A DNA stretch of 64,000 nt, taken from contig NC_068983.1 of NCBI RefSeq assembly GCF_001194135.2, positions 96,701,429 to 96,765,428 on the forward strand, read 5' to 3'. Under the pieces are notes generated by a model. It made no database searches, was not told where the DNA came from, and saw only the letters and a list, made by a program, of their open reading frames with translations. Position numbers and translations under genes: made by a program. The DNA is from Octopus bimaculoides (lineage: Eukaryota). Shown here in pieces: positions 1 through 45,301 of this stretch; the stretch's first letter is position 1; each line of letters opens with the position of its first letter.

Positions 1-236
1 ACAGTGTGACAAGGCTGACCCTTTGAATTACAGGCACAACAGAAACAGGAAGTAAGAGTGAGAGAAAGTTGTAGTGAAAGAGTACAGCAGGGTTCGCCAC
101 CATCCCCTGCCTGAGCCTCGTGGAGCTTTAGGTGTTTTCGCTCAATAAACACTCACAACGCCCGGTCTGGGAATCGAAACCACAATCTTATGACCGCGAG
201 TCCGCTGCTCTAACCACTGGGCCATTGCGCCTCCAC
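1..236 (-). mobile_element. tRNA-derived SINE, family B (head and body; 3' part runs off the window start)
   Basis: Reverse strand begins GTGGAGGCGCAATGGCCCAGTGGTTAGAGCAGCGGACTCGCGGTC...GGTTTCGATTCCC (Pol III A and B boxes, tRNA-like cloverleaf remnant). The body (CCTTTGAATTACAGG) is shared with 11826-12143. Confidence 0.85.
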
Positions 237-1086
237 GTACCACTCATACTTAGTGTGGAATCTTGTCTTTAGAAGCACGTGGAATAACTAAAAACGTAAC
301 TTTGCTTGTTCAAAGTTATAGCATGATTCAGGAGAATGTTAGCTATTAAAAAGTTCAAAAGTAATATTGTTAATACAAATATACATAAAATATCAGCCAC
401 AAAATACATTACATATATATTATATTTTTACCAGGGATTTTTTAAAATCAGCCATGTGACTAACATTACTTTAGCTCCAAACAATGTTGACAATTCTCAC
501 ATCTTGTAAATTGCAATAAAGTTGATAAAAGACAAATAAATATTTGTATAGGTTCTTTTAATTGTAGTACTAGTGATGACTAAATGAAAATTTGGTAAAA
601 ACAAATAATGTAAACGTTGACTATAAAAGTAGTGGTACAGTTTTTGACACTTTCGTATATGAAAATCTCATTAACATGCCTTTCGCTCCGCTCTATATAA
701 TGCAATACTCCTGTAGACCAAACAAAACAGCATTCTAGGCTTGAGTTTTAAAAACTATATTATATTTAATATTCTAGTGGAAACTTATCAAAATGACAAT
801 CTAGATTCTTTTCGAAAGAGCGAAAATGGAATCACTTATCGCATCCACTAAATAAATAACCCAAAGATGCTACTACGAAGAAAAATAAAATGGCTAAGTT
901 AAATAACAATTTTTCACTACATACAAGATGGCGCCTCGGAGTCATTCTTAAAACTTTTCTATTTTCTATGTCAAACCAACGAACAAGCTTGTGCATATCC
1001 TGAGCAATACTCGCATCATTATTTCGTCAAGTACGTCGAAGTCTATGCTTTGTTGAAATATATCTGGTCTCTTATCGTACTGAGAT

Positions 1087-1288
1087 AATCCTTTCTACTA
1101 TAGACACAAAGCCTGAAATTGGAGGTAGGGTGATAGTCGATAACTTCGACTTGAGTACTCAACTGGTACTTATTTTATCGATCGCGAAAGGATGAAAGGC
1201 AATGTCAACCTCGGTGGAATTTGTACTTACAACATAAAAACGAACGAAATGCTGATAAGCATTTTTCCTGCCGCAGTCAGCTTGCCGT
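1087..1288 (-). mobile_element. tRNA-derived SINE family A, copy 1 of a tandem triplet
   Basis: Reverse complement matches the most intact copy at 34353-34567 (GGCGGCGAGCTGGCAG head; CTTTCATCCTTTCG core; AGTAGAAAGGATT tail). Confidence 0.85.
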
Positions 1289-1310
1289 TTTAATAATGAT
1301 TTCAAATTTT

Positions 1311-1445
1311 GGCACAAGGCCAGCATTTTCGGGAGAGGTAGATAAAATAAGTACTCGAGTTGTACTTATTTTATCGACCCCGAAAGGGGACTCGGCGCAA
1401 TTTGAACTCAGAAATGCCGCTAAGCATTTCGCCAAGCTCACTGCT
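1311..1445 (-). mobile_element. SINE family A, copy 2 (internally deleted)
   Basis: GGCACAAGGCC...AGTACTTATTTTATCGACCCCGAAAGG...TTTGAACTCAG...GCCAAGCTCACTGC; same modules as copies 1 and 3. Confidence 0.8.
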
Positions 1446-1448
1446 TTA

Positions 1449-1450
<2 letters not shown>

Positions 1451-1511
<61 letters not shown>
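1451..1511. repeat. (AAT)n microsatellite between SINE-A copies
   Basis: About 20 perfect AAT units, read directly. Confidence 0.98.
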
Positions 1512-1693
1512 TTCCATTCTACTAAAGGTTCAAGGCCTGAAATTTGAGGAGAGGGGACTAGTCGATTACATCGACCCCAGTGTTTCACTGGTATTTAATT
1601 TATTGACCCAGGAAGGACGAAAGAGAGAGTCGACGGGCGAAATACTACTAAGCATTTCGTCTAGCGTGCTAACAATTCTGCCAGCTCACCGCC
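1511..1693 (-). mobile_element. SINE family A, copy 3
   Basis: TTCTACTAAAGG...AGTCGATTACATCGACCCCAG...CTAACAATTCTGCCAGCTCACCGCC; head abuts (TAA)n. Confidence 0.85.

Positions 1694-1694
<1 letters not shown>

Positions 1695-1753
<59 letters not shown>
1695..1753. repeat. (TAA)n microsatellite, left flank of the Dong element
   Basis: About 19 perfect TAA units. Confidence 0.98.
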
Positions 1754-2563
1754 TTTACCCTACATGGTAAATACTGGGCTAAACTAAATGCGAANNNNNN
1801 NNNNNNNNNNNNNNNNNNNNNNNNNNNNNNNNNNNNNNNNNNNNNNNNNNNNNNNNNNNNNNNNNNNNNNNNNNNNNNNNNNNNNNNNNNNNNNNNNNNN
1901 NNNNNNNNNNNNNNNNNNNNNNNNNNNNNNNNNNNNNNNNNNNNNNNNNNNNNNNNNNNNNNNNNNNNNNNNNNNNNNNNNNNNNNNNNNNNNNNNNNNN
2001 NNNNNNNNNNNNNNNNNNNNNNNNNNNNNNNNNNNNNNNNNNNNNNNNNNNNNNNNNNNNNNNNNNNNNNNNNNNNNNNNNNNNNNNNNNNNNNNNNNNN
2101 NNNNNNNNNNNNNNNNNNNNNNNNNNNNNNNNNNNNNNNNNNNNNNNNNNNNNNNNNNNNNNNNNNNNNNNNNNNNNNNNNNNNNNNNNNNNNNNNNNNN
2201 NNNNNNNNNNNNNNNNNNNNNNNNNNNNNNNNNNNNNNNNNNNNNNNNNNNNNNNNNNNNNNNNNNNNNNNNNNNNNNNNNNAGAAACAATTCCTATCAT
2301 AGTAGGTGCCTTAGGTATAATAAAAAAATACTCAGACAAATACATAACAAAAATACCAGGACTTACAAATATATGTAACATACAGAAAATTGCACTACTG
2401 GGTACTGCACACATCCTACGCAAAACACTTTCAATACAGTAAACATAAAAGCACCACAGCAAACCACAGCACATACCCAAGGCGCACAGAGCTGCGCTCG
2501 GTAGTGAAGTGAAAGCACGTTATAAAAATAAAACTACTGAACAATAATAATAATAATAATAAT
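1754..2563 (+). mobile_element. 5'-truncated Dong/R4-clade non-LTR retrotransposon spanning an assembly gap, with 3' UTR and (AAT)7 tail
   Basis: Before the gap, 1760-1792 translates LHGKYWAKLNA (the LHG.Y motif seen upstream of the CCHC/RLE region in R4/Dong proteins). After the gap, 2284-2442 translates ETIPIIVGALGIIKK...IQKIALLGTAHILRKTLSIQ*, a typical R4/Dong C-terminus. A 3' UTR hairpin GCGCA-CAGAGC-TGCGC and an (AAT)7 tail follow. Confidence 0.85.
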
Positions 2564-2958
2564 AGTTCCTTTTATTAGCTACAGGAGCGTAGATGACGGG
2601 GACATCACATGGACAGACCACAATTTGTGTGGGGATTTACATAAAGGATGGGGAGAAAGAAATGGAAACGGCGAATTGCGATAAAAGTACACATTGTATA
2701 CAAAATATGTGATAGCATGAATTATGCAGTCCTCCTGTTACAGGATAGACTACAGCTAGGATCAATCAAGGAACCTCACAGGTCCAGACACACTGAAGTC
2801 ACGAGACCTCTCTTACGCTCTCTAATCTACAGGCACATACTTAGAGTAGAGCTATTCACCCTAACCATTTTTGTCGCGGTCACCCATCTTTTCATAAATT
2901 CAGTGGGTGATAGAGTTTTCCTCTTCAACCCTTTTTTCCTTTCAAATTGAAACTTAAA
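2564..2958 (-). mobile_element. 3' end of an L1/Tx1-type LINE (ORF2 C-terminus, 3' UTR, AATAAA, (ATT)n tail)
   Basis: Minus strand reads FKFQFERKKGLKRKTLSPTEFMKRWVTATKMVRVNSSTLSMCL* (stop at 2827-2829), then about 260 nt of UTR ending GCTAATAAAAGGAACT(ATT)7. Clade assignment is from recalled similarity to Tx1-like C-termini. Confidence 0.6.
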
Positions 2959-2964
2959 AAAAGA

Positions 2965-3201
2965 TGAAGGTTCCATGAAATGTTTTGATTTAAATGTATG
3001 TATTGCAAGACACAGCTAGGTTTCTTTCGTCAACATTTTGCATGGTTCAACCTACACGAGTTTATGAGTTAATAACAAAATAGGAATTTTGAAAGAAGTA
3101 TCTAGAAAATTAGTTTTTAACCATCGAATGGCTATAGGAGTGCATCAGAATAGAATAGTAAACAAAGTGGTCCATAGGTAAAACATGGTTGAGGATCACT
3201 A
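2965..3201 (+). mobile_element. hAT MITE, 5'-truncated copy (family of 14391-14718 and 28380-28829)
   Basis: Shares internal sequence (GTTCAACCTACACGAG, CATCGAATGGCTAT) and a right TIR GGTTGAGGATCACTA, followed by TACTAGAG. Confidence 0.75.
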
Positions 3202-3349
3202 TACTAGAGAGAAGAACATCACCTGCCATGCCTTGTTATAGGTGAATGGTGGGGCGATCCTCACGATAGAATCGGCCGATAGTCGGATTCATCTGACTCA
3301 CGATAACAGCTGTTCGGCCTAACTCGGCAGTACTCGGAAACTGAACGAA

Positions 3350-3490
3350 TGCCTGTTGAACGCTCCTTCGTTTCTGGTTCAGTCCAATAGCGCAGCAATT
3401 TGGTCAAGTGTCTTTTACTGTAGCTTTGGGCTGACCAATGCCTTGTGAGTGAATTTGGGAGACGGAAACTCTGTGAAAGCCCGCCGTATG
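3350..3490 (+). mobile_element. SINE family C, diverged 5' half
   Basis: GGTTCAGTCC...TTGGTCAAGTGTCTTTTACTGTAGC...GCCTTGTGAGTGAATTTGGGAGACGGAAAC aligns by eye to 40055-40210. Confidence 0.7.
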
Positions 3491-5649
3491 CACACATGCA
3501 AACACACAGACGCTCACACACATATATGAAGACTGAAAAATTTGTCTGGCACTTTATTTTATGATCCTGAACGGAAGAAAAGCGAAGTTGACCAGGAGGT
3601 ATTTGAACTCAGAGCATAAAGAACCGGAAGAAATAACGACTCATTTTGAGTTAGAGTCAATACTGAAGGAAGCCTAACCGACGTTCTGAACATGCTTCAA
3701 ATCTAATGTCCTTTAAATGTGATATTAATTAGTGCATAATTAAGGTTTTCAGGGCTGCAGGTTACTCGATGCCATCGAGGTAGTACTTTATTGGTACTTT
3801 GTTTAATCTGAAAATAATGAAGACAATGTACTCACTTTCCATCCGCTAAATTCCATTGAAAAGTGTCGATGAACACGATGCTTATGGTAGGAAACATTTG
3901 CCCAGTGTGTCACGCGATTTGATGGAATCAAGAAGGCCATCATTGTGAAACAATATTTGCAACACACGCAAGCGCGCATACTGCTATGCGTGTGGCTATG
4001 GTATAAATCAATTAAAACGATGAAAGACAAAGTCAACTCTGATGATATTTGAACTCACAGCGTAAAGGTTAAATGCTGAAATAGTAAATATAAGCAACAA
4101 TCGGTAGAAACTAATTATGGTTAGCCCCAATAAATGAAAAGAAAGAAAATGAAAATTGATAAAATTCGTAAAATGAGATAAAGAGCCAAGCCCAATGGCG
4201 TCAGAATTCACATCTTTTTCTCACTGCATATCTAATTATCTTATTTTATTAAATGCTGTACAGCATGTAAAATATTTAGTCAGATGATGTTTGTTTTCTG
4301 CCAAATTCACTGTCCTTCGTCTCGACCACATACTGTTTTTCATGTAAGCAACATGATCATTCCCATCATTAAGAAGAACGACAGCGACCGCACAAACACG
4401 ATACATATACATACATATACAGTAATATATTCAAGTATATAATCTGTACGGGCTCAGAGCACATATACAAATACGCGAGCAAAACAAAACATAGCCGTCA
4501 ACGTCACTGCTACAAATATATCTACACATAACGCAGTCTTACAACACACACAAGCACAAACACATAAAGAGTCACATAACCATACTCATACACATGACAT
4601 ACATACCAGTCCCTAGCACCCTCCTCTCATACACTTCATGTACTTTTTCTACAGCAATGGCAAGAAGAGCAACAATGAACAAACAATGGCGGACAGAAAG
4701 ATGATGAAATGTATAAAATAGAATAACAATATAAACAGTGACAATTTTTTTTTTTTTAGGGAGAGTTAGAGAAGAATAGAGAGGGAGAAACAGAGAGAGA
4801 GAGAGGAAGAGAGCAAAAACGATAGGAAGAAAGAGACAAAGTGATACGACACAGAAGTGGTGTGACACACGGAAACAACGGACAAGAAAAGAGAGGAAAA
4901 ATAAAAGCAAGAGAACGAGAAGGTGATTGACAAAAGTAATGGGTAGATAGTGAGAAAAAGAGACAAACAGAAGCGTAGAGAGAGAGAGAGTGAGAGAGAG
5001 AGAGAGAGTGAGAGAGGGTATATGCATATGTGTATATATATNNNNNNNNNNNNNNNNNNNNNNNNNNNNNNNNNNNNNNNNNNNNNNNNNNNNNNNNNNN
5101 NNNNNNNNNNNNNNNNNNNNNNNNNNNNNNNNNNNNNNNNNNNNNNNNNNNNNNNNNNNNNNNNNNNNNNNNNNNNNNNNNNNNNNNNNNNNNNNNNNNN
5201 NNNNNNNNNNNNNNNNNNNNNNNNNNNNNNNNNNNNNNNNNNNNNNNNNNNNNNNNNNNNNNNNNNNNNNNNNNNNNNNNNNNNNNNNNNNNNNNNNNNN
5301 NNNNNNNNNNNNNNNNNNNNNNNNNNNNNNNNNNNNNNNNNNNNNNNNNNNNNNNNNNNNNNNNNNNNNNNNNNNNNNNNNNNNNNNNNNNNNNNNNNNN
5401 NNNNNNNNNNNNNNNNNNNNNNNNNNNNNNNNNNNNNNNNNNNNNNNNNNNNNNNNNNNNNNNNNNNNNNNNNNNNNNNNNNNNNNNNNNNNNNNNNNNN
5501 NNNNNNNNNNNNNNNNNNNNNNNNNNNNNNNNNNNNNNNNNNNNNNNNNNNNNNNNNNNNNNNNNNNNNNNNNNNNNNNNNNNNNNNNNNNNNNNNNNNN
5601 NNNNNNNNNNNNNNNNNNNNNNNNNNNNNNNNNNNNNNNNNNNNNNNNN

Positions 5650-6975: not shown

Positions 6976-7508
6976 TCTCTTATCGTTCTTTTTAGACATC
7001 TGCAGTATTGTGCATTGAGAATTTGTCCCCCAGGGCCAAACTATCAATCGAGAGTTCTACTGTGAAGTTTTGAGACAGTTTGAAGGAAGACATTCGGCGA
7101 AAGTGACCGGATCTGTGGAGAGCGAAAATCGGATTCTTCTGGACGACAATGCATCCTGTCACTGAGTTCTCTTCACTCATGAGTTTCTCGCCAAAAACAA
7201 TATCGTATCGCTTCTGCAGCCGCTCTATTCGCTAGATTTAGTATCTGCGAACTTCCATCTCTTTCCCAAGATGAAAATGGCGGCTCAAAAGTCGCCGTTT
7301 CAACACCATTGTCGTGATCAAGAGCAAATCCCGGAAGATCCTTGAGTCACAGAAAACAACTTCCAAATCGGATTCCAAAGGTGGCAGAAACGCTGGGATC
7401 GGTGTACTGCTGCGCAAGGCCACTATTTCGAAGGGGACGATGTTAAAACTTAAGTAATTACTTTACTTTAAAGCATAGTTAGTCCGGGAATTTTTTGATA
7501 CCATCTCG
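6976..7508 (+). mobile_element. mariner (DD34D-type) transposon, 3' half with right TIR; pseudogenised transposase
   Basis: Translates FLDICSIVH*EFVPQGQTINREFYCEVLRQ...ILLDDNASCH*...LYSLDLVSANFHLFPKMK...FQRWQKRWDRCTAAQGHYFEGD, with 34 residues between D and the position of the third D (mutated to N). Right TIR GTCCGGGAATTTTTTGATACCATCTCG is followed by TA. Confidence 0.88.
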
Positions 7509-7798: not shown

Positions 7799-7955
7799 AA
7801 TCCTTTCTACTATAGGCACAAAGCCTGAAATTTGGGTGGACTGGAATTTGGAGGGACTGGAATTTGGAGGGACTGGAATTTGGAGGGACGAGTCGATTAC
7901 ATCCACACCGGTGTTCAATTGGTACTTATTTTATCGACACCGAAAATTTGAAAGT
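7799..7955 (-). mobile_element. SINE family A, 3' half, with an internal 16-bp triplication
   Basis: AATCCTTTCTACTATAGGCACAAAGCCTGAAATTT...AGTCGATTACAT...GGTACTTATTTTATCGAC; (GACTGGAATTTGGAGG)x3 at 7839-7886. Confidence 0.85.
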
Positions 7956-8597: not shown

Positions 8598-9567
8598 CTT
8601 CATGTATATATATATATACATATATANNNNNNNNNNNNNNNNNNNNNNNNNNNNNNNNNNNNNNNNNNNNNNNNNNNNNNNNNNNNNNNNNNNNNNNNNN
8701 NNNNNNNNNNNNNNNNNNNNNNNNNNNNNNNNNNNNNNNNNNNNNNNNNNNNNNNNNNNNNNNNNNNNNNNNNNNNNNNNNNNNNNNNNNNNNNNNNNNN
8801 NNNNNNNNNNNNNNNNNNNNNNNNNNNNNNNNNNNNNNNNNNNNNNNNNNNNNNNNNNNNNNNNNNNNNNNNNNNNNNNNNNNNNNNNNNNNNNNNNNNN
8901 NNNNNNNNNNNNNNNNNNNNNNNNNNNNNNNNNNNNNNNNNNNNNNNNNNNNNNNNNNNNNNNNNNNNNNNNNNNNNNNNNNNNNNNNNNNNNNNNNNNN
9001 NNNNNNNNNNNNNNNNNNNNNNNNNNNNNNNNNNNNNNNNNNNNNNNNNNNNNNNNNNNNNNNNNNNNNNNNNNNNNNNNNNNNNNNNNNNNNNNNNNNN
9101 NNNNNNNNNNNNNNNNNNNNNNNNNNNNNNNNNNNNNNNNNNNNNNNNNNNNNNNNNNNNNNNNNNNNNNNNNNNNNNNNNNNNNNNNNNNNNNNNNNNN
9201 NNNNNNNNNNNNNNNNNNNNNNNNNNNNNNNNNNNNNNNNNNNNNNNNNNNNNNNNNNNNNNNNNNNNNNNNNNNNNNNNNNNNNNNNNNNNNNNNNNNN
9301 NNNNNNNNNNNNNNNNNNNNNNNNNNNNNNNNNNNNNNNNNNNNNNNNNNNNNNNNNNNNNNNNNNNNNNNNNNNNNNNNNNNNNNNNNNNNNNNNNNNN
9401 NNNNNNNNNNNNNNNNNNNNNNNNNNNNNNNNNNNNNNNNNNNNNNNNNNNNNNNNNNNNATATATATATATATATATATAAACAATATATGAGTATATG
9501 CATATATATGTACATGTATGTATATACCTTCATCCACATGTACATATAGATACATAACTGGGTACAC

Positions 9568-23496: not shown

Positions 23497-24032
23497 ATGA
23501 TGCAGTACTAGACAGTGGTTCTCGTGGCTTTTGATCCTAACTGATTGGAAGTATTATCATGTACATTGTTTTGTCTTGGTATAAAGGATGGGCTACAACA
23601 AATATTCTGCTCAATACCACAGATTTGCTTGTCAGTTGCTTGACCTTAACCAGTTGAGCATGTCCCTTAATAGTTGATGATATGTGCATATCTGATCATG
23701 AGCAGAAGTAGTGAGGGTACCTCATAACGATATGGTGCGAGGAATTCTTTGGTGTTTGCATATTTCATCTCTGGAAACATTCGTGTTTTGTTTATCATTC
23801 TTAAACGAGCTTTATTCAGGAACCTTTTGAGCAGGATGAGCTACTCAACCTGAAGAAAATTCTAACTGGGTTCCACTTGTAAGGTCATGCGCTGTTTATC
23901 GTGATATGAGATCACCATGTCGCGCACATATGGTTGTTGTACATGTGCCTGGTGTATCCTTATCAGACGGGTAGTCATGACGGGTATATTTTACCCCAGT
24001 GTCACTTTGATGGCATGCACTACTCTCTCACA
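23497..24032. mobile_element. 'Element X': about 535-bp non-coding interspersed repeat flanked by TAA-type repeats on both sides
   Basis: Left flank GATAATAATCGTAATAAT; right flank (AAC)n(AAT)n; partial second copy at 15160-15330; no long ORF. Confidence 0.65.
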
Positions 24033-24090
24033 CAACAACAACAACAACAACAATGACAACAACAACAACAACAACAATAATAATAATAAT
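24033..24090. repeat. (AAC)n-(AAT)n compound microsatellite
   Basis: Read directly. Confidence 0.97.
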
Positions 24091-24303
24091 CCTTTCTACT
24101 ATAGGCACAAGACCTGAAATTGTGGTGGAGGGGAATAATCGATTACATCGACCCCAGAACTCAACTGGTACTTAATTTATCGACCCCGAAAAGATGAAAG
24201 TTAAAATAGACCTCAGTGGATTTTGAACTCATAACATAGAGACAAACGAAATGCCGCCAAGCATTTTGCCCGGCGTTCTAACGATTTTGTCCGATTGCTG
24301 CCC
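24088..24303 (-). mobile_element. SINE family A, full length
   Basis: AATCCTTTCTACTATAGGCACAAG...ATCGACCCCAG...GACCTCAGTGGATTTTGAACTC...CTAACGATTT...GCTGCCC, followed by TAATAA. Confidence 0.88.
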
Positions 24304-28379: not shown

Positions 28380-28829
28380 CAGTGGTTCTCAACCGGGGTC
28401 CATGTGGCTCTATGAAGGTCCACATAACATTTTTTATATTGGGATTCATGCAATAAAGTAGTAAATTGGGGCTCCGGAAAAATGTTTGCTTTAGGTGCAT
28501 GTATTGGTATGAATTGAAAAAAACAAAACACAACAAAAAAAAAAAAACAGCGAGGTTTCTTTCTCTGACGTTTTAAATTGGGGATCCACAAAAGTATTTT
28601 AAGGACCCTTCAAAAAAATTTTGCTTCAGACGTATTGATTAGTACGTATTGTTAGAAGCAGCTAGGATTCTTTCTCTAGCGTTTTGTATAATTCAATCTA
28701 CACAAATCAATGTATGAAAAACAAAATTGGAATTTTGAAATAAATTTCTATATAACTAGTTTTTAAACATCGAATGGTAAAATAATATTTCAAAGGGGTC
28801 TATAGATAAAAAGTGGTTGAGAACTCCTG
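28380..28829 (+). mobile_element. hAT (Buster-type) MITE, full length, TSD GCTTAAGG/GCTTAAGA
   Basis: TIRs CAGTGGTTCTCAACC / GGTTGAGAACTCCTG; 8-bp TSD with a 7/8 match at 28372-28379 and 28830-28837. Confidence 0.9.
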
Positions 28830-29761: not shown

Positions 29762-30713
29762 NNNNNNNNNNNNNNNNNNNNNNNNNNNNNNNNNNNNNNN
29801 NNNNNNNNNNNNNNNNNNNNNNNNNNNNNNNNNNNNNNNNNNNNNNNNNNNNNNNNNNNNNNNNNNNNNNNNNNNNNNNNNNNNNNNNNNNNNNNNNNNN
29901 NNNNNNNNNNNNNNNNNNNNNNNNNNNNNNNNNNNNNNNNNNNNNNNNNNNNNNNNNNNNNNNNNNNNNNNNNNNNNNNNNNNNNNNNNNNNNNNNNNNN
30001 NNNNNNNNNNNNNNNNNNNNNNNNNNNNNNNNNNNNNNNNNNNNNNNNNNNNNNNNNNNNNNNNNNNNNNNNNNNNNNNNNNNNNNNNNNNNNNNNNNNN
30101 NNNNNNNNNNNNNNNNNNNNNNNNNNNNNNNNNNNNNNNNNNNNNNNNNNNNNNNNNNNNNNNNNNNNNNNNNNNNNNNNNNNNNNNNNNNNNNNNNNNN
30201 NNNNNNNNNNNNNNNNNNNNNNNNNNNNNNNNNNNNNNNNNNNNNNNNNNNNNNNNNNNNNNNNNNNNNNNNNNNNNNNNNNNNNNNNNNNNNNNNNNNN
30301 NNNNNNNNNNNNNNNNNNNNNNNNNNNNNNNNNNNNNNNNNNNNNNNNNNNNNNNNNNNNNNNNNNNNNNNNNNNNNNNNNNNNNNNNNNNNNNNNNNNN
30401 NNNNNNNNNNNNNNNNNNNNNNNNNNNNNNNNNNNNNNNNNNNNNNNNNNNNNNNNNNNNNNNNNNNNNNNNNNNNNNNNNNNNNNNNNNNNNNNNNNNN
30501 NNNNNNNNNNNNNNNNNNNNNNNNNNNNNNNNNNNNNNNNNNNNNNNNNNNNNNNNNNNNNNNNNNNNNNNNNNNNNNNNNNNNNNNNNNNNNNNNNNNN
30601 NNNNNNNNNNNNNNNNNNNNNNNNNNNNNNNNNNNNNNNNNNNNNNNNNNNNNNNNNNNNNNNNNNNNNNNNNNNNNNNNNNNNNNATAAAATCTTGAAC
30701 TCAATGTTATATA

Positions 30714-31843: not shown

Positions 31844-33117
31844 GAGGGGCTGGACAGAATAATGGAAACACCTAGCATCATAGCATCGTAATTTTGAAAT
31901 ATCTATAAAACCGTCAAAAGCTTATTTATTTTTATGTTATTTTGATTTATTATTAGTGTTGCTTAATATGTTTTGCTAAAAATTGCTGTTTCTTTTCAGA
32001 TATCATCAGAAAAAGGTAATTAAACTACATTAAAATGACAGATCTATCGGGCTTCCAAAGAGGTCAAATCGTTGGTGCTCGTATGGCCGGCGCTAGCGTA
32101 ACGAAAACAGCCGAAATGTTTCGTGTATCAAGAAATAATGTCTCGAAAATAAAGACAGAGTTTGGAAAAAAGAGGGAAAACCTCCTCGTCAAAACAAAAC
32201 TCAGGAAGAAAACCAAAACTTTCAGATAGGGACCATCGGACTCTTGCGCGAATTGTTAGAAAGGATCACAAAAGTACAGCTCCCAAAATTACTGCAGAGT
32301 TTAATGACCACCTCGAGAACCCAGTTTCCACAAAATCTGTTCGATGGGAGTTGCACAAAGCCGGATTTTACGGGAGGGCTGCAATTAGAAAACCACTACT
32401 TTAAAAAACAAACTTTGCAAAGCGTTTAGCATGGAGAAAAAACCTACATAATTGGTCCCTAGAGCAGTGGAAGAATGTTATTTTCTTGGATAAGTCATCC
32501 TTTACCTTATTTCCGACCACCGGCCGAGTATACGAGTGGAGACAACCAAAAGAAGCATTTGACCCAGACTGCTTTCTTCAAACTGTTAAACATGGAAGAG
32601 GATCTGTGATGATCTGGCGGGATATATCTTGGAAATCCAATGGCCCAATGGTTTCCCTACATGGCAGAATTAATAGTCAAGACTATTTAAGCATTTTATC
32701 TGATTACATTCATCCTATGTTTGCGGAACTGTTTCCGGAGGGAAACGGCATCTTTCAGGATGATAATGCATCAATTCACACAGCTGAAATGTTACTGAAA
32801 GGCACGAGGAACATTCTAGTGAAATTGAACATCTCATGTAGCCATCACAGTCCCCAGATCTCAATATTATTGAACATTTATAGTGCATTTTAGAAAAACA
32901 AGTAAGGAGTCGATATCCTCCACCATCATCACTACAAGAACTGGAGACTGTTTTAGCTGAAGAATGAACAAAATTCCTTTGGAAACAATTCAAACTTTGT
33001 ACGAGTCCATACCTCATAGAATTCAAGCTGTAATTACTACCAATGGTGGTCCTACCCCATATTAAAATGAATTTGTTTAAAATTTGAAGGTGTTTCTATT
33101 ATTTTGTCCAACCCCTG
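31844..33117 (+). mobile_element. Full-length Tc1-family transposon (1274 bp, about 29-bp TIRs, TA TSD) inserted in a (TATG)n microsatellite
   Basis: Left TIR GAGGGGCTGGACAGAATAATGGAAACACC and right TIR GGTGTTTCTATTATTTTGTCCAACCCCTG; TA at 31842-31843 and 33118-33119; (TATG)n continues on both sides. Confidence 0.95.
32035..33065 (+). pseudogene. Tc1 transposase pseudogene with DD36E spacing (Incomer-like)
   Basis: MTDLSGFQRGQIVGARMAGASVTKTAEMF...SGRKPKLSDRD...HKAGFYGRAAIRKPLL...VKHGRGSVMIW...FQDDNASIHTA...SPDLNIIE...GGPTPY*. At least two frameshifts and several stops. Restoring one deleted base near 32790 gives 36 residues between D and E. Confidence 0.92.
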
Positions 33118-33400: not shown

Positions 33401-34352
33401 TTAAGTGTATGTGTTTGTGTGTATAGACACACACACACACACACACATACTAATATGCAAATATCTTATCTCTTTAGCTAAATAGTTTTTTTTTCTCTTA
33501 TACCCATATATTCCTTAATGTGTGTGCCACATAGCTGATATTAAACTGCAGGTAATTTAGATATTTGATTTAAAGCCGTTTTCTGCCCCCGAGCTTTCAC
33601 TGTCATGGCACCGTTTTGTACCATGTCTTTAACCTTAGTTATCATTTGACTTCTTAAGCAATATTCATATTCTCTTTCATAACCTGGAGAGAACTTCTGT
33701 CTTATTTTTCCCTAAGGGTTCGTTGCATAAAACTACATTTTCACCCCTAACCAATGTGATTTTTAGATTTCAGGAATATCATGTCATCTTTTTTGTTCTT
33801 TATTCTATGATCAATACGATATACATTTTATCTCTCTGCTCGATCCCTGCCTCTTTCATTCAATAGTTTTTTTCTGCATAGCATATCAATACACAATATT
33901 TCCAACTAATACTCTATAAAATTTTTGTAAAACTATTTTTAAGTTACTGAATTATTTTTTCAAAACATATTACTCGCTCTATCGAAAGGTATACATCTCA
34001 TTCTATAGTTATACTGTACTTTACATAGCGTATAATTTTTTTTAATATTTAAGATCTCATACTTACTTCCTTCGGCCATTAAATAAATTGCATAATTTTT
34101 ATTTCACTATATATCTGTATTGTATAAATTTTATGCTGTGATCTACTTGTACTTTTATCATTTTTTCACTGGTTCACAACTGCAACTTCGTCAACCATCT
34201 GAGGTCTTATATTTCATTACACTGTGTAACACGATTTTTTTTTACCTTGGGTAACAACTGTTATTTTATCTTTGCTTATTGCTAGAAAGCATGAAAAATA
34301 GTTAATATTTCCTTCAAACTTTACTTTTGTTACGATATTTATCCAAACCTAA

Positions 34353-34567
34353 GGCGGCGAGCTGGCAGAAACGTTACCACGCCGGGCGAAATGCTTAGCC
34401 GTATTTCTTCTGCTTTTATGTTCTGAGTTCAAATTCCGCCGAGGTCGACTTTGCCTTTCATCCTTTCGGGGTCGATAGATTAAGTACCATTTGCGTGCTG
34501 GGGTCGATCTAATCGACTGACCCTCTCCCGCAAAATTTCGGCCTTTGTGCCTAGAATAGAAAAGGAT
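34353..34567 (+). mobile_element. SINE family A, most intact copy
   Basis: GGCGGCGAGCTGGCAGAAACGTTA (A box), GAGTTCAAATTCC (B box), central GACTTTGCCTTTCATCCTTTCGGGGTCGATAG, GTCGAT/ATCGAC hairpin, tail TAGAAAAGGAT. Confidence 0.92.
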
Positions 34568-37500
34568 ATATATCCAAACTTAATCTTACATAGTAGACAT
34601 CCTATAATATAATACACAATGAACACGACAAGGTATTCATATAATTCACCTTCTGAACAACTGCCATCCCTTAATATAGTGTGTCCCATGCTATTTTCTT
34701 CTAAGCGCCACAATAACTTTCCAGAAAAATGTATGCCCCACCAGTGGTTGGAAAAAAGTGCTTTATTTTTAAAATTTCATCATTATATATTTTCCTTCAA
34801 GAAATATCCTCACTAGGGTATTGGAGTAGCGCTATACTGTAGCAAAGTCTTCACAAGTATGCTTGACTGGAGGGATTGGTTTGGCTAGATTGAGTATAGG
34901 TATAGTATGTTTGCTGTGAAAAATAGATTTTCACAATTCCATGTCCCACTAAAAGAAAAAAGAAAAAAGTTTTGATCCAACGCCCCATCACAATATTCCC
35001 AGACTTCACCGGTTAGGCATATTCCTCACGCTGGGAAACAATGCCTTAATATAACACAAACACTAACACAGAACTTGTACAACGCGTTCACCAGCTAACA
35101 AAATAATGCAATTCAAACAGGACACATCTTACGCAAAAAGTGGATCAAGCACTAGAGTAAGCAACAAGATAGTTGTGATATGCGAATCTAATACTACACC
35201 TATACACGCTGCACCCACATCATCACAGGAGTGCACCGAGTGCGACGGCAGAAACACTCATGAATCTATTGCAAAAACGATGATATTAACGACGACGACA
35301 ACGATGATCATCGCCATGACGACACGACGATGATCATAATGAACATGATGTTACCACATTTAGTCTCGTACAAGTTTAGAATTGCGGATATTAAAATGAG
35401 TCTAAAGTAAAAGAAGAGAAAATATGTTTTAATCAGGAGGACGAAAACAGTTCTTCCTTCTTTGTTCATCATACTTCGTTCTTCGTTCTTTGTTCTTCCT
35501 CTTCTAAGATCCCACAGTTTTCTCTACTTACAAGAAAGCACACGTATACACGCAAATATTAATGATCTTCCCTCAAAATCATTGATGACTGTTTCTCTTA
35601 CAATTGTGGAGCATTTGATACGTGTCCATCCTAATCTATCTCCTCTTTCAATGGCGGTTGCTCTGGAGTCTTAAAGAAGCGCAACATATTATTGATAGGA
35701 GAATTATTGCGTGTGCTACCGTCTATGCTATATCTACTGCATGACTTCAGGAGCAAGGAAACTATGAAAGTAACGGTATAATATTATCGAAGACGTGTGT
35801 GATATTCTGGCCGCTGCAACGACAGCATCAACTTTTAAACTCATGATCCATGGTTTTAGATTTCAGATGTAATCATTGTCGTTGTTGTTGAAAATATCGG
35901 TGTAATGAATCATTAAAATGATTTTAGAGTGCACCTTTCCCAGTTTCCCTATATCCACAGTGAAAATGATAAATCAAGTCACAAGGGCAATCGAACACGA
36001 CTGCTATTTCTTTCAGCTGCGGGAAACTTGCTGAGAAACAGCGGTGGGAAATCTTTTTGTTTACAAGCTCATCTTAATTGAATTCTCAGCTTTATTTTCG
36101 TTGGGGTGAGAATGCCTATTCAGTATTTCGCAGCAAAAATAATGAAGATTCAACAGGAGACTCAGATGGTAAATAACGCAGTGTTCAGTGTTCTGGGGAT
36201 AAATGTTATCTTTTGATATTAATACTGCTTCTGAAGCTATTAATTAATTTTTGATAAGTCCATTGACTATTTGCGACTCCAATTCCGGAATAGACAGTGA
36301 GATTCTATCTATATCGCTGACGAGGGAATCAATGCTATCTCTACCCATGGGCGCTTGCCATTGACAAGATTCATGAAGGACGAAATCATGTGATCCGGTA
36401 GTACCGGCGGCGATAGCGGACAATTATCTACCGCAAGTGATAGAGACATGAGTGATTTTGTGTACCACAAATCCATATGAAATGTTATCTCATTTTGTAA
36501 CACAACATCTACTTTTAAGTTGGGATAAATAATTTAGCAATTTCGTATATAATTTGTAGATAGTAAAATTTTATCGCATTTTCTCTTTTGTAAATGTATA
36601 CTAATACGAGAAACCATTATTTAGACGTACCTGGATACTGAGTTCACACTGAGTATGTGTATGTGTCTTCATATTCACTTTATTGACATAAATTATTAAG
36701 ATAGTACTGACAATGTGGTAGTGTTAATCTATTCCGAGTCCCTTTCTCCTTAAAGTTGCCATTCACATATTCCATGTAGATAGCTAAGTTGTTTTCCATA
36801 CAAACGATTCGCCAAAACGTTTCTTCATAATAAAGAGCCTCCTTAAATATCACCAATCTTCTTCTCGAGTCTCTATAGAAAGTTTCTTGCTTTTCTACTA
36901 CCCTCGTTCCTATAAAAAGAGAAGTACCCCAGGTCTATTTTTTAAACATTGTAAATTAATTTTATTGAAAAATGTTTAGTTTACTCTTTCTAACTATAAT
37001 CATTACTAAACTTTGTAATATTCTGACTATGTGTTATAAGGAGGATGTTCCTCGTTTAAGTTGTCAGGATAGATGTATGTATACATGTATGTATGTGTGT
37101 TGATAAATAGTAGCTCTGTGTAAGTGGTAACAGTGGCTCTCTATACATGCATCTGGATACATATTTCTAGGCACATCTAAGTACACACTAATATCTCACT
37201 ACAACACTGAAGTAGAATATGTATATTTTCTATATGTAAGTGCAAATCAGCAAATACTGTACATTTATATACACACGCATATATATATATATATATNNNN
37301 NNNNNNNNNNNNNNNNNNNNNNNNNNNNNNNNNNNNNNNNNNNNNNNNNNNNNNNNNNNNNNNNNNNNNNNNNNNNNNNNNNNNNNNNNNNNNNNNNNNN
37401 NNNNNNNNNNNNNNNNNNNNNNNNNNNNNNNNNNNNNNNNNNNNNNNNNNNNNNNNNNNNNNNNNNNNNNNNNNNNNNNNNNNNNNNNNNNNNNNNNNNN

Positions 37501-40054: not shown

Positions 40055-40488
40055 GCGTGGCTGTGTGGTAAGAAGTTTGCTTCTCAACCACATGGTTCCG
40101 GGTTCAGTTCCACTGCGCGGCACCTTGGGCAAGTGTCTTCTACTATATCTTCGGGTCGACCAAAGCCTTGTGAGTGTATTTGGTAGACGGAAACTGAAAG
40201 AAGCCTATCATATGTATGTGCACGTGTGTGTTTGTGTGTGTGTGTGCGTGTGTGTGTGCGTGTGTGTGTGTATCTATGTCTGTGCTTGTCCCCAACCCCC
40301 ACCCCTACCCTCCGGTGCTGCTTCACAACCAATGCTGGTGTGTTTATATACACATAACTTGGTGGTTCGGCAAAGGAGACGATAGAATAAGTTCTAGGCT
40401 TATAAAAAATAAGTCCTGGAGTCTTTAAGGCAGTGCTCCAGCATGGCAGCAGTGAAATGACTGAAACAAGTAAAAGAATAAAAGAATA
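40055..40488 (+). mobile_element. SINE family C, full length (tRNA head, CORE-like block, internal (TG)n, TAAAAGAA tail)
   Basis: GCGTGGCTGTGTGGTAAG...GGGTTCAGTTCC...CCTTGGGCAAGTGTCTT...(TG)n...GCTCCAGCATGGC...GACTGAAACAAGTAAAAGAATAAAAGAAT. Confidence 0.92.
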
Positions 40489-45124: not shown

Positions 45125-45301
45125 ATAAAGCCAGCAAGTTCGAGGGAATGGGGTAAGTCGATAACATCGACCCCAGTAATTAACTATTACTTATTTTATC
45201 GACCCTGAAAGAATGAAAGGCAAAGTCGACCTCGGCGGAATTTGAACCCAGAGCGTAAAGTATTTTGCTCGGCGTGCTAACGATTCTGCCAGCTCACTAC
45301 C
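45125..45301 (-). mobile_element. SINE family A
   Basis: AAGTCGATAACATCGACCCCAG...GAAAGGCAAAGTCGACCTCGGCGGAATTTGAAC...GCTAACGATTCTGCCAGCTCAC. Confidence 0.9.

What the first reader, a model, noticed from the sequence alone, without database searches (positions are those of the whole stretch)
1087..2958. (TAA)n hub 1: five retroelements from three unrelated families chained through TAA repeats
Seen: the order is SINE-A(-), TAATAAT, SINE-A(-), (AAT)20, SINE-A(-), (TAA)19, 5'-truncated Dong/R4(+), (AAT)7, L1/Tx1 3' end(-), with almost no unique DNA between them. Established: Dong elements of the R4 clade target TAA repeats, and several Tx1-clade families are microsatellite-specific. Inference: TAA repeats act as a shared, self-renewing landing pad. 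Each insertion brings or duplicates more TAA/ATT, creating targets for the next. Dong uses the TAA strand, while SINE-A and the Tx1 use the ATT strand.
Basis: partly seen in the sequence, partly recalled or inferred. Interest (0 to 1): 0.8.

Follow-up and report, generated by a model that had tools for sequence, protein, structure and literature searches.

The report
Retroelement pile-up at an octopus TAA microsatellite
In what looks like octopus DNA, three old SINE copies and one young, 5'-truncated Dong-like LINE sit head-to-tail joined only by TAA repeats; this is an ordinary example of a known habit of such elements, and the claimed fifth element (L1/Tx1) could not be confirmed.

Summary
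Three copies of one SINE family lie on the minus strand (1087-1290, 1298-1449, 1512-1694). They are joined by TAATAAT and by two pure TAA arrays of about 20 units. A 5'-truncated LINE on the plus strand follows and ends in (AAT)7.

The assembly gap (1795-2282) was tested first. Both edges match one Dong-like element in order and orientation (37/37 and 97% identity to a 990-bp octopus-type contig). About 560 bp is missing against 488 N, so reading-frame continuity cannot be decided.

The LINE has a CCHC knuckle plus a restriction-like endonuclease. Its relatives in other organisms carry an RT domain and have TAA repeats at both ends. It therefore behaves like Dong; placement in the R4 clade was not tested.

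The "L1/Tx1 3' end" (2565-2967) has no support: no protein domain, no homologue, no second copy and no target duplication.

The landing-pad idea is partly supported. It is strong for the Dong-like LINE. For the SINE it is only a preference for ATT at the insertion site, because dispersed copies lack TAA arrays. Genome-wide statistics could not be run.

This is known biology: a new example of it, of low to moderate interest.

The parts
1087..1290 (-). SINE-A copy c1. It keeps the 5' end and has an 11-bp deletion in the head. The body ends ...AGAAAGGATT with an AT tail at 1085-1086.
   Evidence: It is about 80% identical to a rough seven-copy consensus. It is flanked by ATTATTA (5') and ATTAT (3') in SINE orientation.
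1291..1297 (.). TAATAAT spacer. This is the short ATT tail of c2 and the target of c1.
   Evidence: Read directly.
1298..1449 (-). SINE-A copy c2. It has internal deletions and keeps the 5' end CTAAAGCAG. Its 3' end is the variant also seen in the dispersed copy at 45156-45300.
1450..1511 (.). (TAA)20.7 array, 100% pure. It reads (ATT)n on the SINE strand, between the c3 3' end and the c2 5' end.
   Evidence: TRF.
1512..1694 (-). SINE-A copy c3. It has a deletion of about 30 bp over the B-box-like region. Its 5' end merges into the next array.
1695..1753 (.). (TAA)19.7 array, 100% pure. It is the 5' flank of c3 on the minus strand and the 5' target flank of the Dong-like copy on the plus strand.
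   Evidence: TRF.
1754..1757 (.). TTTA filler at the 5' junction of the truncated LINE.
   Evidence: Identity to L012 starts at window 1758.
1758..1794 (+). Dong-like LINE, left edge of the gap. It encodes (P)LHGKYWAKLNA.
   Evidence: 37/37 identical to L012:108-144. The same peptide is in P0126 residues 21-32.
1795..2282 (.). Assembly gap of 488 N. It should hold about 560 bp of the element, including the CCHC and restriction-like endonuclease coding part.
   Evidence: L012:145-704 is the missing stretch.
2285..2542 (+). Dong-like LINE, right edge of the gap. The last 52 codons lie at 2284-2439, the stop at 2440-2442 and the 3' UTR at 2443-2542.
   Evidence: 97.1% identical to L012:705-984. 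87% amino-acid identity to an Octopus bimaculoides protein and 94% to P0126.
2543..2564 (+). (AAT)7.3, the 3' tail of the Dong-like copy.
   Evidence: L012 ends ...ACTGAAC(AAT)9 or more at the same point.
2565..2967 (.). On present evidence it is simply the right-hand flank of the microsatellite.
   Evidence: No Pfam hit in six frames. The 100-aa ORF has no homologue among 1.84 billion proteins. No second copy in the window. No target-site duplication. No resemblance to the SINE-A tail.
2968..3215 (+). An unrelated interspersed repeat that bounds the unassigned piece. It is not part of the hub.
   Evidence: Copies at 14496-14725 (80%) and 28621-28821 (69%).

Best explanation
This is a TAA/TTA microsatellite locus in an octopus-type genome that has collected retroelements by target-primed reverse transcription.

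SINE-A steps (inferred from junctions):
- Three old SINE-A copies entered independently on the minus strand. Each went into ATT repeats left by, or lying next to, the previous copy.
- The enzyme that SINE-A borrows appears to start cDNA synthesis where the target begins with ATT, which can pair with the SINE's ATT 3' end.
- A run of ATT therefore offers many start sites in a row. It is a preferred target, not an obligatory one.

Dong-like LINE steps (the element's identity, position and truncation are shown; the target specificity rests on relatives and published work):
- Much later, a Dong-like LINE carrying a restriction-like endonuclease inserted on the plus strand at the right-hand end of the TAA array.
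- That LINE lineage is specific for (TAA)n.
- The copy was 5'-truncated and added its own (AAT)7 tail.

Other points:
- The long pure arrays are kept or extended by replication slippage (inferred).
- The piece at 2565-2967 is most simply the original right flank, not a fifth retroelement.
For: Dong-like LINE:
- Both gap edges match one element in order and orientation.
- That family's last 271 residues carry CX2CX8HX4C and then RPD...(13)...D...K, followed by the conserved C-terminus. They hit Pfam zf-RVT. The only PDB match is the CCHC region of an R2 protein, E=0.015.
- Relatives have RVT_1 upstream in the same locus.
- Every relative whose 3' end could be read ends in (TAA)n or a degenerate form: L012, L013, the TARA loci, L031 and L032.
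- In three relative loci the 5' junction was read, and each begins right after TAA-type repeats.
- L031 appears to hold two copies in tandem joined by TAA repeats, read from the position of the TAA runs and gene calls.
- The same locus in three samples carries 15, 14 and 25 TAA units.
- 97-100% identity to L012 marks this insertion as young. The SINE copies are about 80-87% identical to their consensus.

SINE-A:
- There are seven copies in the window.
- The hub copies are mutually 68-69% identical and are of different 3' variants.
- All hub copies keep their 5' ends and have ATT on both sides.
- Duplications at two dispersed copies start with ATT: ATTTATCCAAAC and ATT(T)ACCTATCTTT. A third candidate, ATTTATTA, is ambiguous.
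- Clustering has p of about 0.003.

Literature:
- Dong targets TAA, including in a snail (PMC3812793, PMC2887409).
- Most restriction-like-endonuclease clades are target-specific (PMC4640811).
- Dong-R4 is the most abundant recently active LINE group in O. vulgaris (PMC13282606).
Against: - Only seven SINE-A copies and one Dong copy could be examined in this species, and no genome-wide flank statistics were run.
- Dispersed SINE-A copies have no TAA array at either end, so any SINE preference is weak. It rests on two clear and one ambiguous duplication, whose boundaries are blurred by the ATT tail itself.
- The LINE partner of SINE-A was not found.
- SINE-A's tRNA origin was not confirmed: ARAGORN and Rfam gave nothing.
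- The middle of the Dong copy is unread. The scaffold join between two parts of a high-copy element could be wrong.
- The two arrays of nearly equal length (about 60 bp) may be capped by short-read assembly.
- Placement inside the R4 clade by RT phylogeny was not done.
Confidence: 0.6

Rival explanations
1. Tails only. SINE-A has no preference for TAA/ATT. The three copies chained because each landed in the A/T-rich tail of the previous one, or nearby by chance. The short ATT tails later grew into long arrays by slippage, and only then did the TAA-specific Dong-like LINE arrive. The microsatellite is a product of the SINEs, and a target only for Dong.
For: - Dispersed SINE-A copies carry tails of 0-4 units and no 5' TAA.
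- The arrays are 100% pure although the neighbouring SINEs are 13-20% diverged, which points to later slippage.
- Retroelement tails are a known birthplace of microsatellites (PMC3812793, PMC2887409).
Against: - All three hub copies have ATT on both sides with exact 5' ends.
- The duplications identified at dispersed copies also begin with ATT.
- Three same-strand copies within 610 bp has p of about 0.003.
- This rival overlaps the main explanation. It differs only in whether ATT is preferred at the nick.
Confidence: 0.25
2. A minus-strand L1/Tx1-clade LINE fragment (2566-2958) with an (ATT)n tail founded the array. SINE-A and the Tx1 share the ATT strand, giving five elements from three families.
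For: - On the minus strand an AATAAA lies 13 bases before the (ATT)7.
- Some Tx1-clade families are microsatellite-specific, for TC and TTC repeats (PMC3812793).
- L1-Tx1 families exist in octopus (PMC13282606).
Against: - No Pfam domain in any frame of 2566-3300, nor on the minus strand of 3200-5040.
- The only long ORF has no homologue among 1.84 billion proteins.
- No second copy in the window, even with sensitive searches.
- No duplication shared with the far flank.
- No similarity to the SINE-A 3' end.
- The (AAT)7 is where the Dong copy's own tail must be.
Confidence: 0.1
3. Assembly artefact. The chain, or the Dong part of it, comes from mis-scaffolding of short-read contigs that end in TAA repeats or in a high-copy LINE.
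For: - The window has 13 gaps, several next to microsatellites.
- The Dong family is young and, in a sister species, has over a thousand copies (PMC13282606).
- The two arrays have suspiciously similar lengths.
Against: - The SINE-TAA-SINE-TAA-Dong junctions at 1087-1794 are continuous read sequence with no N.
- The two gap edges are collinear with one element at nearly the expected spacing, 560 against 490.
Confidence: 0.05

Closest known systems
Dong (Bombyx mori) and its relatives DongAg and DongBg (Biomphalaria glabrata), R4 clade of non-LTR retrotransposons
   Same: - C-terminal CCHC plus PD-(D/E)xK restriction-like endonuclease.
- (TAA)n 3' tail, with insertion into (TAA)n microsatellites and repeats at both junctions.
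- Also present in a mollusc.
   Different: - Clade placement by RT phylogeny was not done here.
- The window copy is a dead 5'-truncated fragment of about 880 bp with its middle unread.
- A TAA tail alone is not diagnostic, because the Drosophila I element also ends in TAA repeats (PMC3747384).
Alu insertions into poly(A) tails of older Alus, through the L1 endonuclease TTTT/AA preference (own knowledge)
   Same: - Non-autonomous SINEs chain head-to-tail.
- The tail of one copy is a good nick and priming site for the next.
   Different: - The tail here is ATT rather than poly(A).
- The partner LINE is unknown.
- The preference rests on a handful of copies.
TRAS and SART LINEs in Bombyx telomeric (TTAGG)n repeats (own knowledge; TRAS targeting is mentioned in PMC2887409)
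   Same: Two unrelated retroelement systems use opposite strands of the same simple repeat.
   Different: - Those are both autonomous, strictly sequence-specific APE-type LINEs at telomeres.
- Here one partner is a SINE with only a weak preference, at an interstitial microsatellite.
Kibi and Koshi, Tx1-clade LINEs specific for (TC)n and (TTC)n
   Different: Nothing in 2565-2967 could be tied to this clade, and no Tx1-clade family specific for TAA/ATT came up in the papers I read.
RTE-type LINEs that carry and spread simple repeats at their 3' ends (PMC2887409)
   Same: Each insertion brings a short simple repeat that can grow into a microsatellite. (ATT)n is among the reported units.
   Different: No RTE sequence was found at the hub. 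Whether an RTE mobilises SINE-A is untested.

Membership tests
Dong / R4-clade non-LTR retrotransposon | Reverse transcriptase domain in the element's ORF | tested here: inconclusive
   The window copy is 5'-truncated and has no RT part. The octopus-type contig L012 covers only the last 271 codons, which hit zf-RVT at E=4.8e-6. Relatives L011 and L031, which share the C-terminal domain, have RVT_1 upstream.
Dong / R4-clade non-LTR retrotransposon | C-terminal CCHC knuckle followed by a PD-(D/E)xK restriction-like endonuclease, with no APE endonuclease | tested here: met
   P0126, P0127 and P0128 carry CX2CX8HX4C and then RPDIVVKD...(13)...D...K. The sole PDB hit is the same knuckle of an R2 protein. 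In the window copy this part lies in the gap. Absence of an N-terminal APE could not be checked.
Dong / R4-clade non-LTR retrotransposon | (TAA)n at the 3' end and insertion into (TAA)n, with repeats at both junctions | tested here: met
   The window has (TAA)19.7 at the 5' junction and (AAT)7.3 at the 3' end. The relatives L012, L013, L002-L011, L031 and L032-L034 show the same.
Dong / R4-clade non-LTR retrotransposon | RT phylogeny places it within the R4 clade rather than R2, NeSL, HERO or CRE | not tested
   No full-length octopus ORF and no named reference sequences were available. The literature annotates Dong-R4 as abundant in Octopus (PMC13282606, PMC9115989).
tRNA-derived SINE (SINE-A) | Short, non-coding, dispersed in many copies, with target-site duplications | tested here: met
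   Seven copies of about 220 bp lie in 58 kb. Duplications of 12-14 bp flank the copies at 34352 and 45156. One copy is 5'-truncated and keeps the 3' end (7799-7954).
tRNA-derived SINE (SINE-A) | Pol III head derived from a tRNA (A and B boxes) | tested here: inconclusive
   By eye there are box-like motifs: GAGCTGGCAGAA and GAGTTCAAATTCC. ARAGORN found no tRNA, and Rfam gave no hit even at E<=10.
tRNA-derived SINE (SINE-A) | 3' end shared with a partner LINE | tested here: not met
   No LINE in the window shares the SINE-A 3' end. The piece at 2565-2967 does not either. Only 58 kb was searched.
L1/Tx1-clade LINE (piece 2565-2967) | ORF2 remnants: APE endonuclease, RT or C-terminal zinc knuckle | tested here: not met
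   No Pfam family at E<=1 in six frames of 2566-3300, and none on the minus strand of 3200-5040. The 100-aa ORF has no homologue.
L1/Tx1-clade LINE (piece 2565-2967) | Repeated in the genome and bounded by a target-site duplication | tested here: inconclusive
   No second copy in the window, and no shared word of 8 bases or more with the far flank. The rest of the genome could not be searched.
L1/Tx1-clade LINE (piece 2565-2967) | Own 3' tail | tested here: inconclusive
   The adjoining (AAT)7 is already accounted for as the Dong copy's tail. An AATAAA 13 bases upstream on the minus strand is weak evidence in DNA of 36% G+C.

The most novel reading that the evidence does not exclude
Both strands of ordinary TAA microsatellites in octopus genomes serve as insertion sites for two unrelated retroelement systems. 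The TAA-specific Dong-like LINE uses one strand. SINE-A, with a still unidentified partner LINE that prefers ATT at the nick, uses the other. Such microsatellites would then grow into self-extending harbours that account for part of the SINE clustering in these SINE-rich genomes.
Probability: 0.25. Interest if true: 0.45.

Novelty: new member of a known kind. Interest (0 to 1): 0.25.

Why it matters
If the pattern holds genome-wide, it would show how simple repeats steer where the very abundant octopus SINEs and Dong-R4 LINEs accumulate, away from genes. It would also explain why short-read octopus assemblies break at such places, and it would point to the LINE that mobilises SINE-A. As a single locus it is a tidy illustration of mechanisms already described in insects, fish, snails and primates.

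Tried and rejected
- Looked for more sequence from the same species so that flanks could be tabulated. Exact look-ups of ten window ORFs and of the O. bimaculoides protein found nothing. The best contigs were about 1 kb.
- Scanned the metagenome collection with the SINE-A core. It returned 17 contigs that share only the central 48 bases, so they come from other invertebrates and are useless for flank counts.
- Two long ENA contigs holding Dong-like relatives contain no SINE-A, so they are not octopus.
- Submitted a six-frame concatenated query for the 'Tx1' piece.
- Tested whether the 'Tx1' piece could be the LINE partner of SINE-A through a shared 3' end. The alignment scores equal those of shuffled sequence.
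- Looked for a duplication bracketing the whole hub. None was found.
- Rejected tandem duplication as the origin of the three SINEs, on the basis of their pairwise identities.

Full report
**Source and setting.** The window is AT-rich eukaryotic DNA (36% G+C) with 13 N-gaps. The only named protein match of the hub's coding fragment is an uncharacterised Octopus bimaculoides protein (87% identity). A Logan contig from run SRR7158634 is 97-100% identical at the DNA level. I therefore treat the window as octopus DNA. The species was not established.

**The repeats.** TRF finds two perfectly pure TAA arrays at 1450-1511 (20.7 units) and 1695-1753 (19.7 units). An (AAT)7.3 run lies at 2543-2564. 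These three runs, all inside the hub, are the only TAA runs of six or more units in the window.

**The SINEs.**
- The three stretches at 1087-1290, 1298-1449 and 1512-1694 belong to one family of about 220 bp. Four more copies lie at 24088-24290 (-), 34352-34570 (+), 45156-45300 (-) and 7799-7954 (-, 5'-truncated).
- Orientation follows from four observations:
  - the conserved 5' end is CTAAGGCGGYGAGCTGGCAG;
  - the conserved 3' end ...CCTATAGTAGAAAGGATT is followed by ATT units;
  - the truncated copy keeps the 3' end;
  - target-site duplications bracket the copies at 34352 (ATTTATCCAAAC) and 45156 (ATT(T)ACCTATCTTT).
- They are 68-69% identical to each other, no closer than to dispersed copies. 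c2 has a different 3' variant, shared with the copy at 45156. They are therefore separate old insertions, not a local duplication.
- Random placement of seven copies gives three within 610 bp on one strand with p of about 0.003.
- A tRNA origin of the head is plausible by eye, but ARAGORN and Rfam did not confirm it.

**The gap, tested first.**
- The 41 bases left of the gap translate to FTLHGKYWAKLNA. The bases right of it translate to ETIPIIVGALG...LRKTLSIQ followed by a stop.
- A search with both parts separated by X returned P0126 (271 aa), which contains both peptides.
- Its contig L012 matches window 1758-1794 at 37/37 (L012:108-144) and window 2285-2564 at 97.1% (L012:705-984), including the 3' UTR and the start of the tail.
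- Both edges therefore belong to the same family, in the same order and orientation.
- The missing part is 560 bp in L012 against 490 positions in the window. Each edge sits in the codon phase expected from the L012 ORF.
- With the nominal gap length the two parts are out of frame by two bases. The gap length is only an estimate, so frame continuity cannot be judged.
- It matters little, because the copy starts about 270 codons before the stop and is a dead 5'-truncated fragment. Four filler bases (TTTA) separate it from the array.

**What the LINE is.**
- P0126, P0127 and P0128 show CX2CX8HX4C, then RPD-(13)-D...K, then the conserved C-terminus.
- Pfam gives zf-RVT. The only PDB match is the equivalent knuckle of an R2 protein, just upstream of its endonuclease.
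- Relatives that share the C-terminal domain at about 60% identity occur in TARA and other ENA metagenome assemblies of unknown marine eukaryotes. They have RVT_1 upstream.
- Wherever their 3' end could be read, they end in ...(TAA)8-12 or a degenerate form.
- In three loci the 5' junction was read, and each follows TAA-type repeats. L031 appears to hold two copies in tandem joined by TAA. One locus seen in three samples has 15, 14 and 25 units.
- An endonuclease of the restriction-like type combined with TAA at both junctions is what is published for Dong, including a snail Dong (PMC3812793, PMC2887409, PMC4640811). Dong-R4 is reported as abundant and recently active in Octopus (PMC13282606, PMC9115989).
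- I did not run an RT phylogeny, so 'Dong-like, R4 clade likely' is the honest label.

**The alleged Tx1.**
- Nothing supports it. There is no Pfam family in any frame of 2566-3300 or on the minus strand up to the next gap.
- The only long ORF (100 aa, plus strand) has no homologue among 1.84 billion representatives.
- Sensitive BLAST, nhmmer and tblastx find no second copy in the window.
- There is no duplication with the far flank and no resemblance to the SINE-A tail.
- The stretch ends at 2967 because an unrelated repeat starts there, with copies at 14496 and 28621.
- It may still be a repeat elsewhere in the genome, which could not be searched.

**Mechanism.** Read on the minus strand, the order is: flank, (ATT)7, reversed Dong, (ATT)19.7, c3, (ATT)20.7, c2, ATTATTA, c1, ATTAT, unique DNA.
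- Each SINE has ATT on both sides. That is the signature of insertion into ATT repeats with an ATT duplication. For example, c1 lies between ATTATTA and ATTAT, so it entered c2's short tail.
- Dispersed copies have no arrays, but the duplications identified begin with ATT: two clearly, and a third candidate (ATTTATTA) ambiguously.
- This fits target-primed reverse transcription in which the nicked strand pairs with the SINE's ATT 3' end (inference).
- A TAA/TTA array would then be a run of good sites, preferred but not required.
- The Dong-like copy is the youngest event (97-100% against about 80-87% identity). It inserted at the right end of the array on the other strand, in line with the lineage's specificity.
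- The purity of the arrays next to diverged SINEs implies ongoing slippage, renewal or assembly limits (inference).

**Comparison and novelty.** All ingredients are known:
- TAA-specific Dong;
- microsatellite-specific LINEs;
- SINE tails as seeds and targets of further insertions (Alu in Alu tails, own knowledge);
- opposite-strand use of one repeat by two element families (TRAS and SART, own knowledge).

The locus is a clear octopus example and a new member of a known kind. It needs the genome-wide test, which these tools could not run.

Noticed in passing
window 34442-34489 (SINE-A positions 91-138); loci L014-L030: The central 48 bases of SINE-A (...CTTTCATCCTTTCGGGGTCGATARATTAAGTACC) recur at 83-95% identity in 16 of the 17 JGI metagenome contigs returned by the scan. 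Those contigs share nothing else with SINE-A. It looks like one of the conserved SINE central domains (Nin-DC/Deu type, from memory). The domain type was not verified.
   Followed up: partly
L031:2341-10701: In a long-read metagenome contig of an unknown marine eukaryote, two Dong-like copies appear to lie in tandem. The layout is (TAA)29+..., copy 1, degenerate TAA at 6990-7025, copy 2, (TAA)12. This is the same chaining through TAA in another organism.
   Followed up: partly
L032:6192-6236, L033:6198-6239, L034:6162-6236: The same Dong-like insertion locus, seen in three samples, has 15, 14 and 25 TAA units at its 5' junction. The flanking array is length-polymorphic.
   Followed up: no
window 7825-7889: The 5'-truncated SINE-A copy at 7799-7954 carries an internal 16-bp tandem repeat (CTGGAATTTGGAGGGA x4.1) derived from the SINE's own 3' body.
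   Followed up: no
window 24032-24089: The SINE-A copy at 24088-24290 has an (ATT)4 tail that runs straight into an (ACA)15 array on the plus strand. It is another SINE end abutting a microsatellite of a different motif.
   Followed up: no
window 58070-60214 (-): A degenerate, frameshifted LINE with an RT domain (RVT_1, E=1.5e-10) and an endonuclease-like N-terminal part seen by eye. It shows no DNA similarity to 2565-2967.
   Followed up: partly
window 60-245 (-); 3230-3520 (+) with partial copies at 40095, 52343 and 55973: At least two further SINE-like families are present. One has a clearly tRNA-like head by eye (60-245, minus strand, a single copy in the window). The other ends in CA/TG-rich simple repeats.
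   Followed up: no
window 32486-32893 (+): A 135-aa ORF with a ...GIFQDDNASIHTA... motif that recalls Tc1/mariner transposases by eye. Pfam gave no hit at E<=0.01.
   Followed up: partly
window gaps 5042-5649, 8627-9460, 16315-16712, 29762-30686, 50645-51079: Several assembly gaps are bordered on one or both sides by di- or tetranucleotide microsatellites. This suggests the short-read assembly breaks at simple repeats, so array lengths in this window should not be taken at face value.
   Followed up: no
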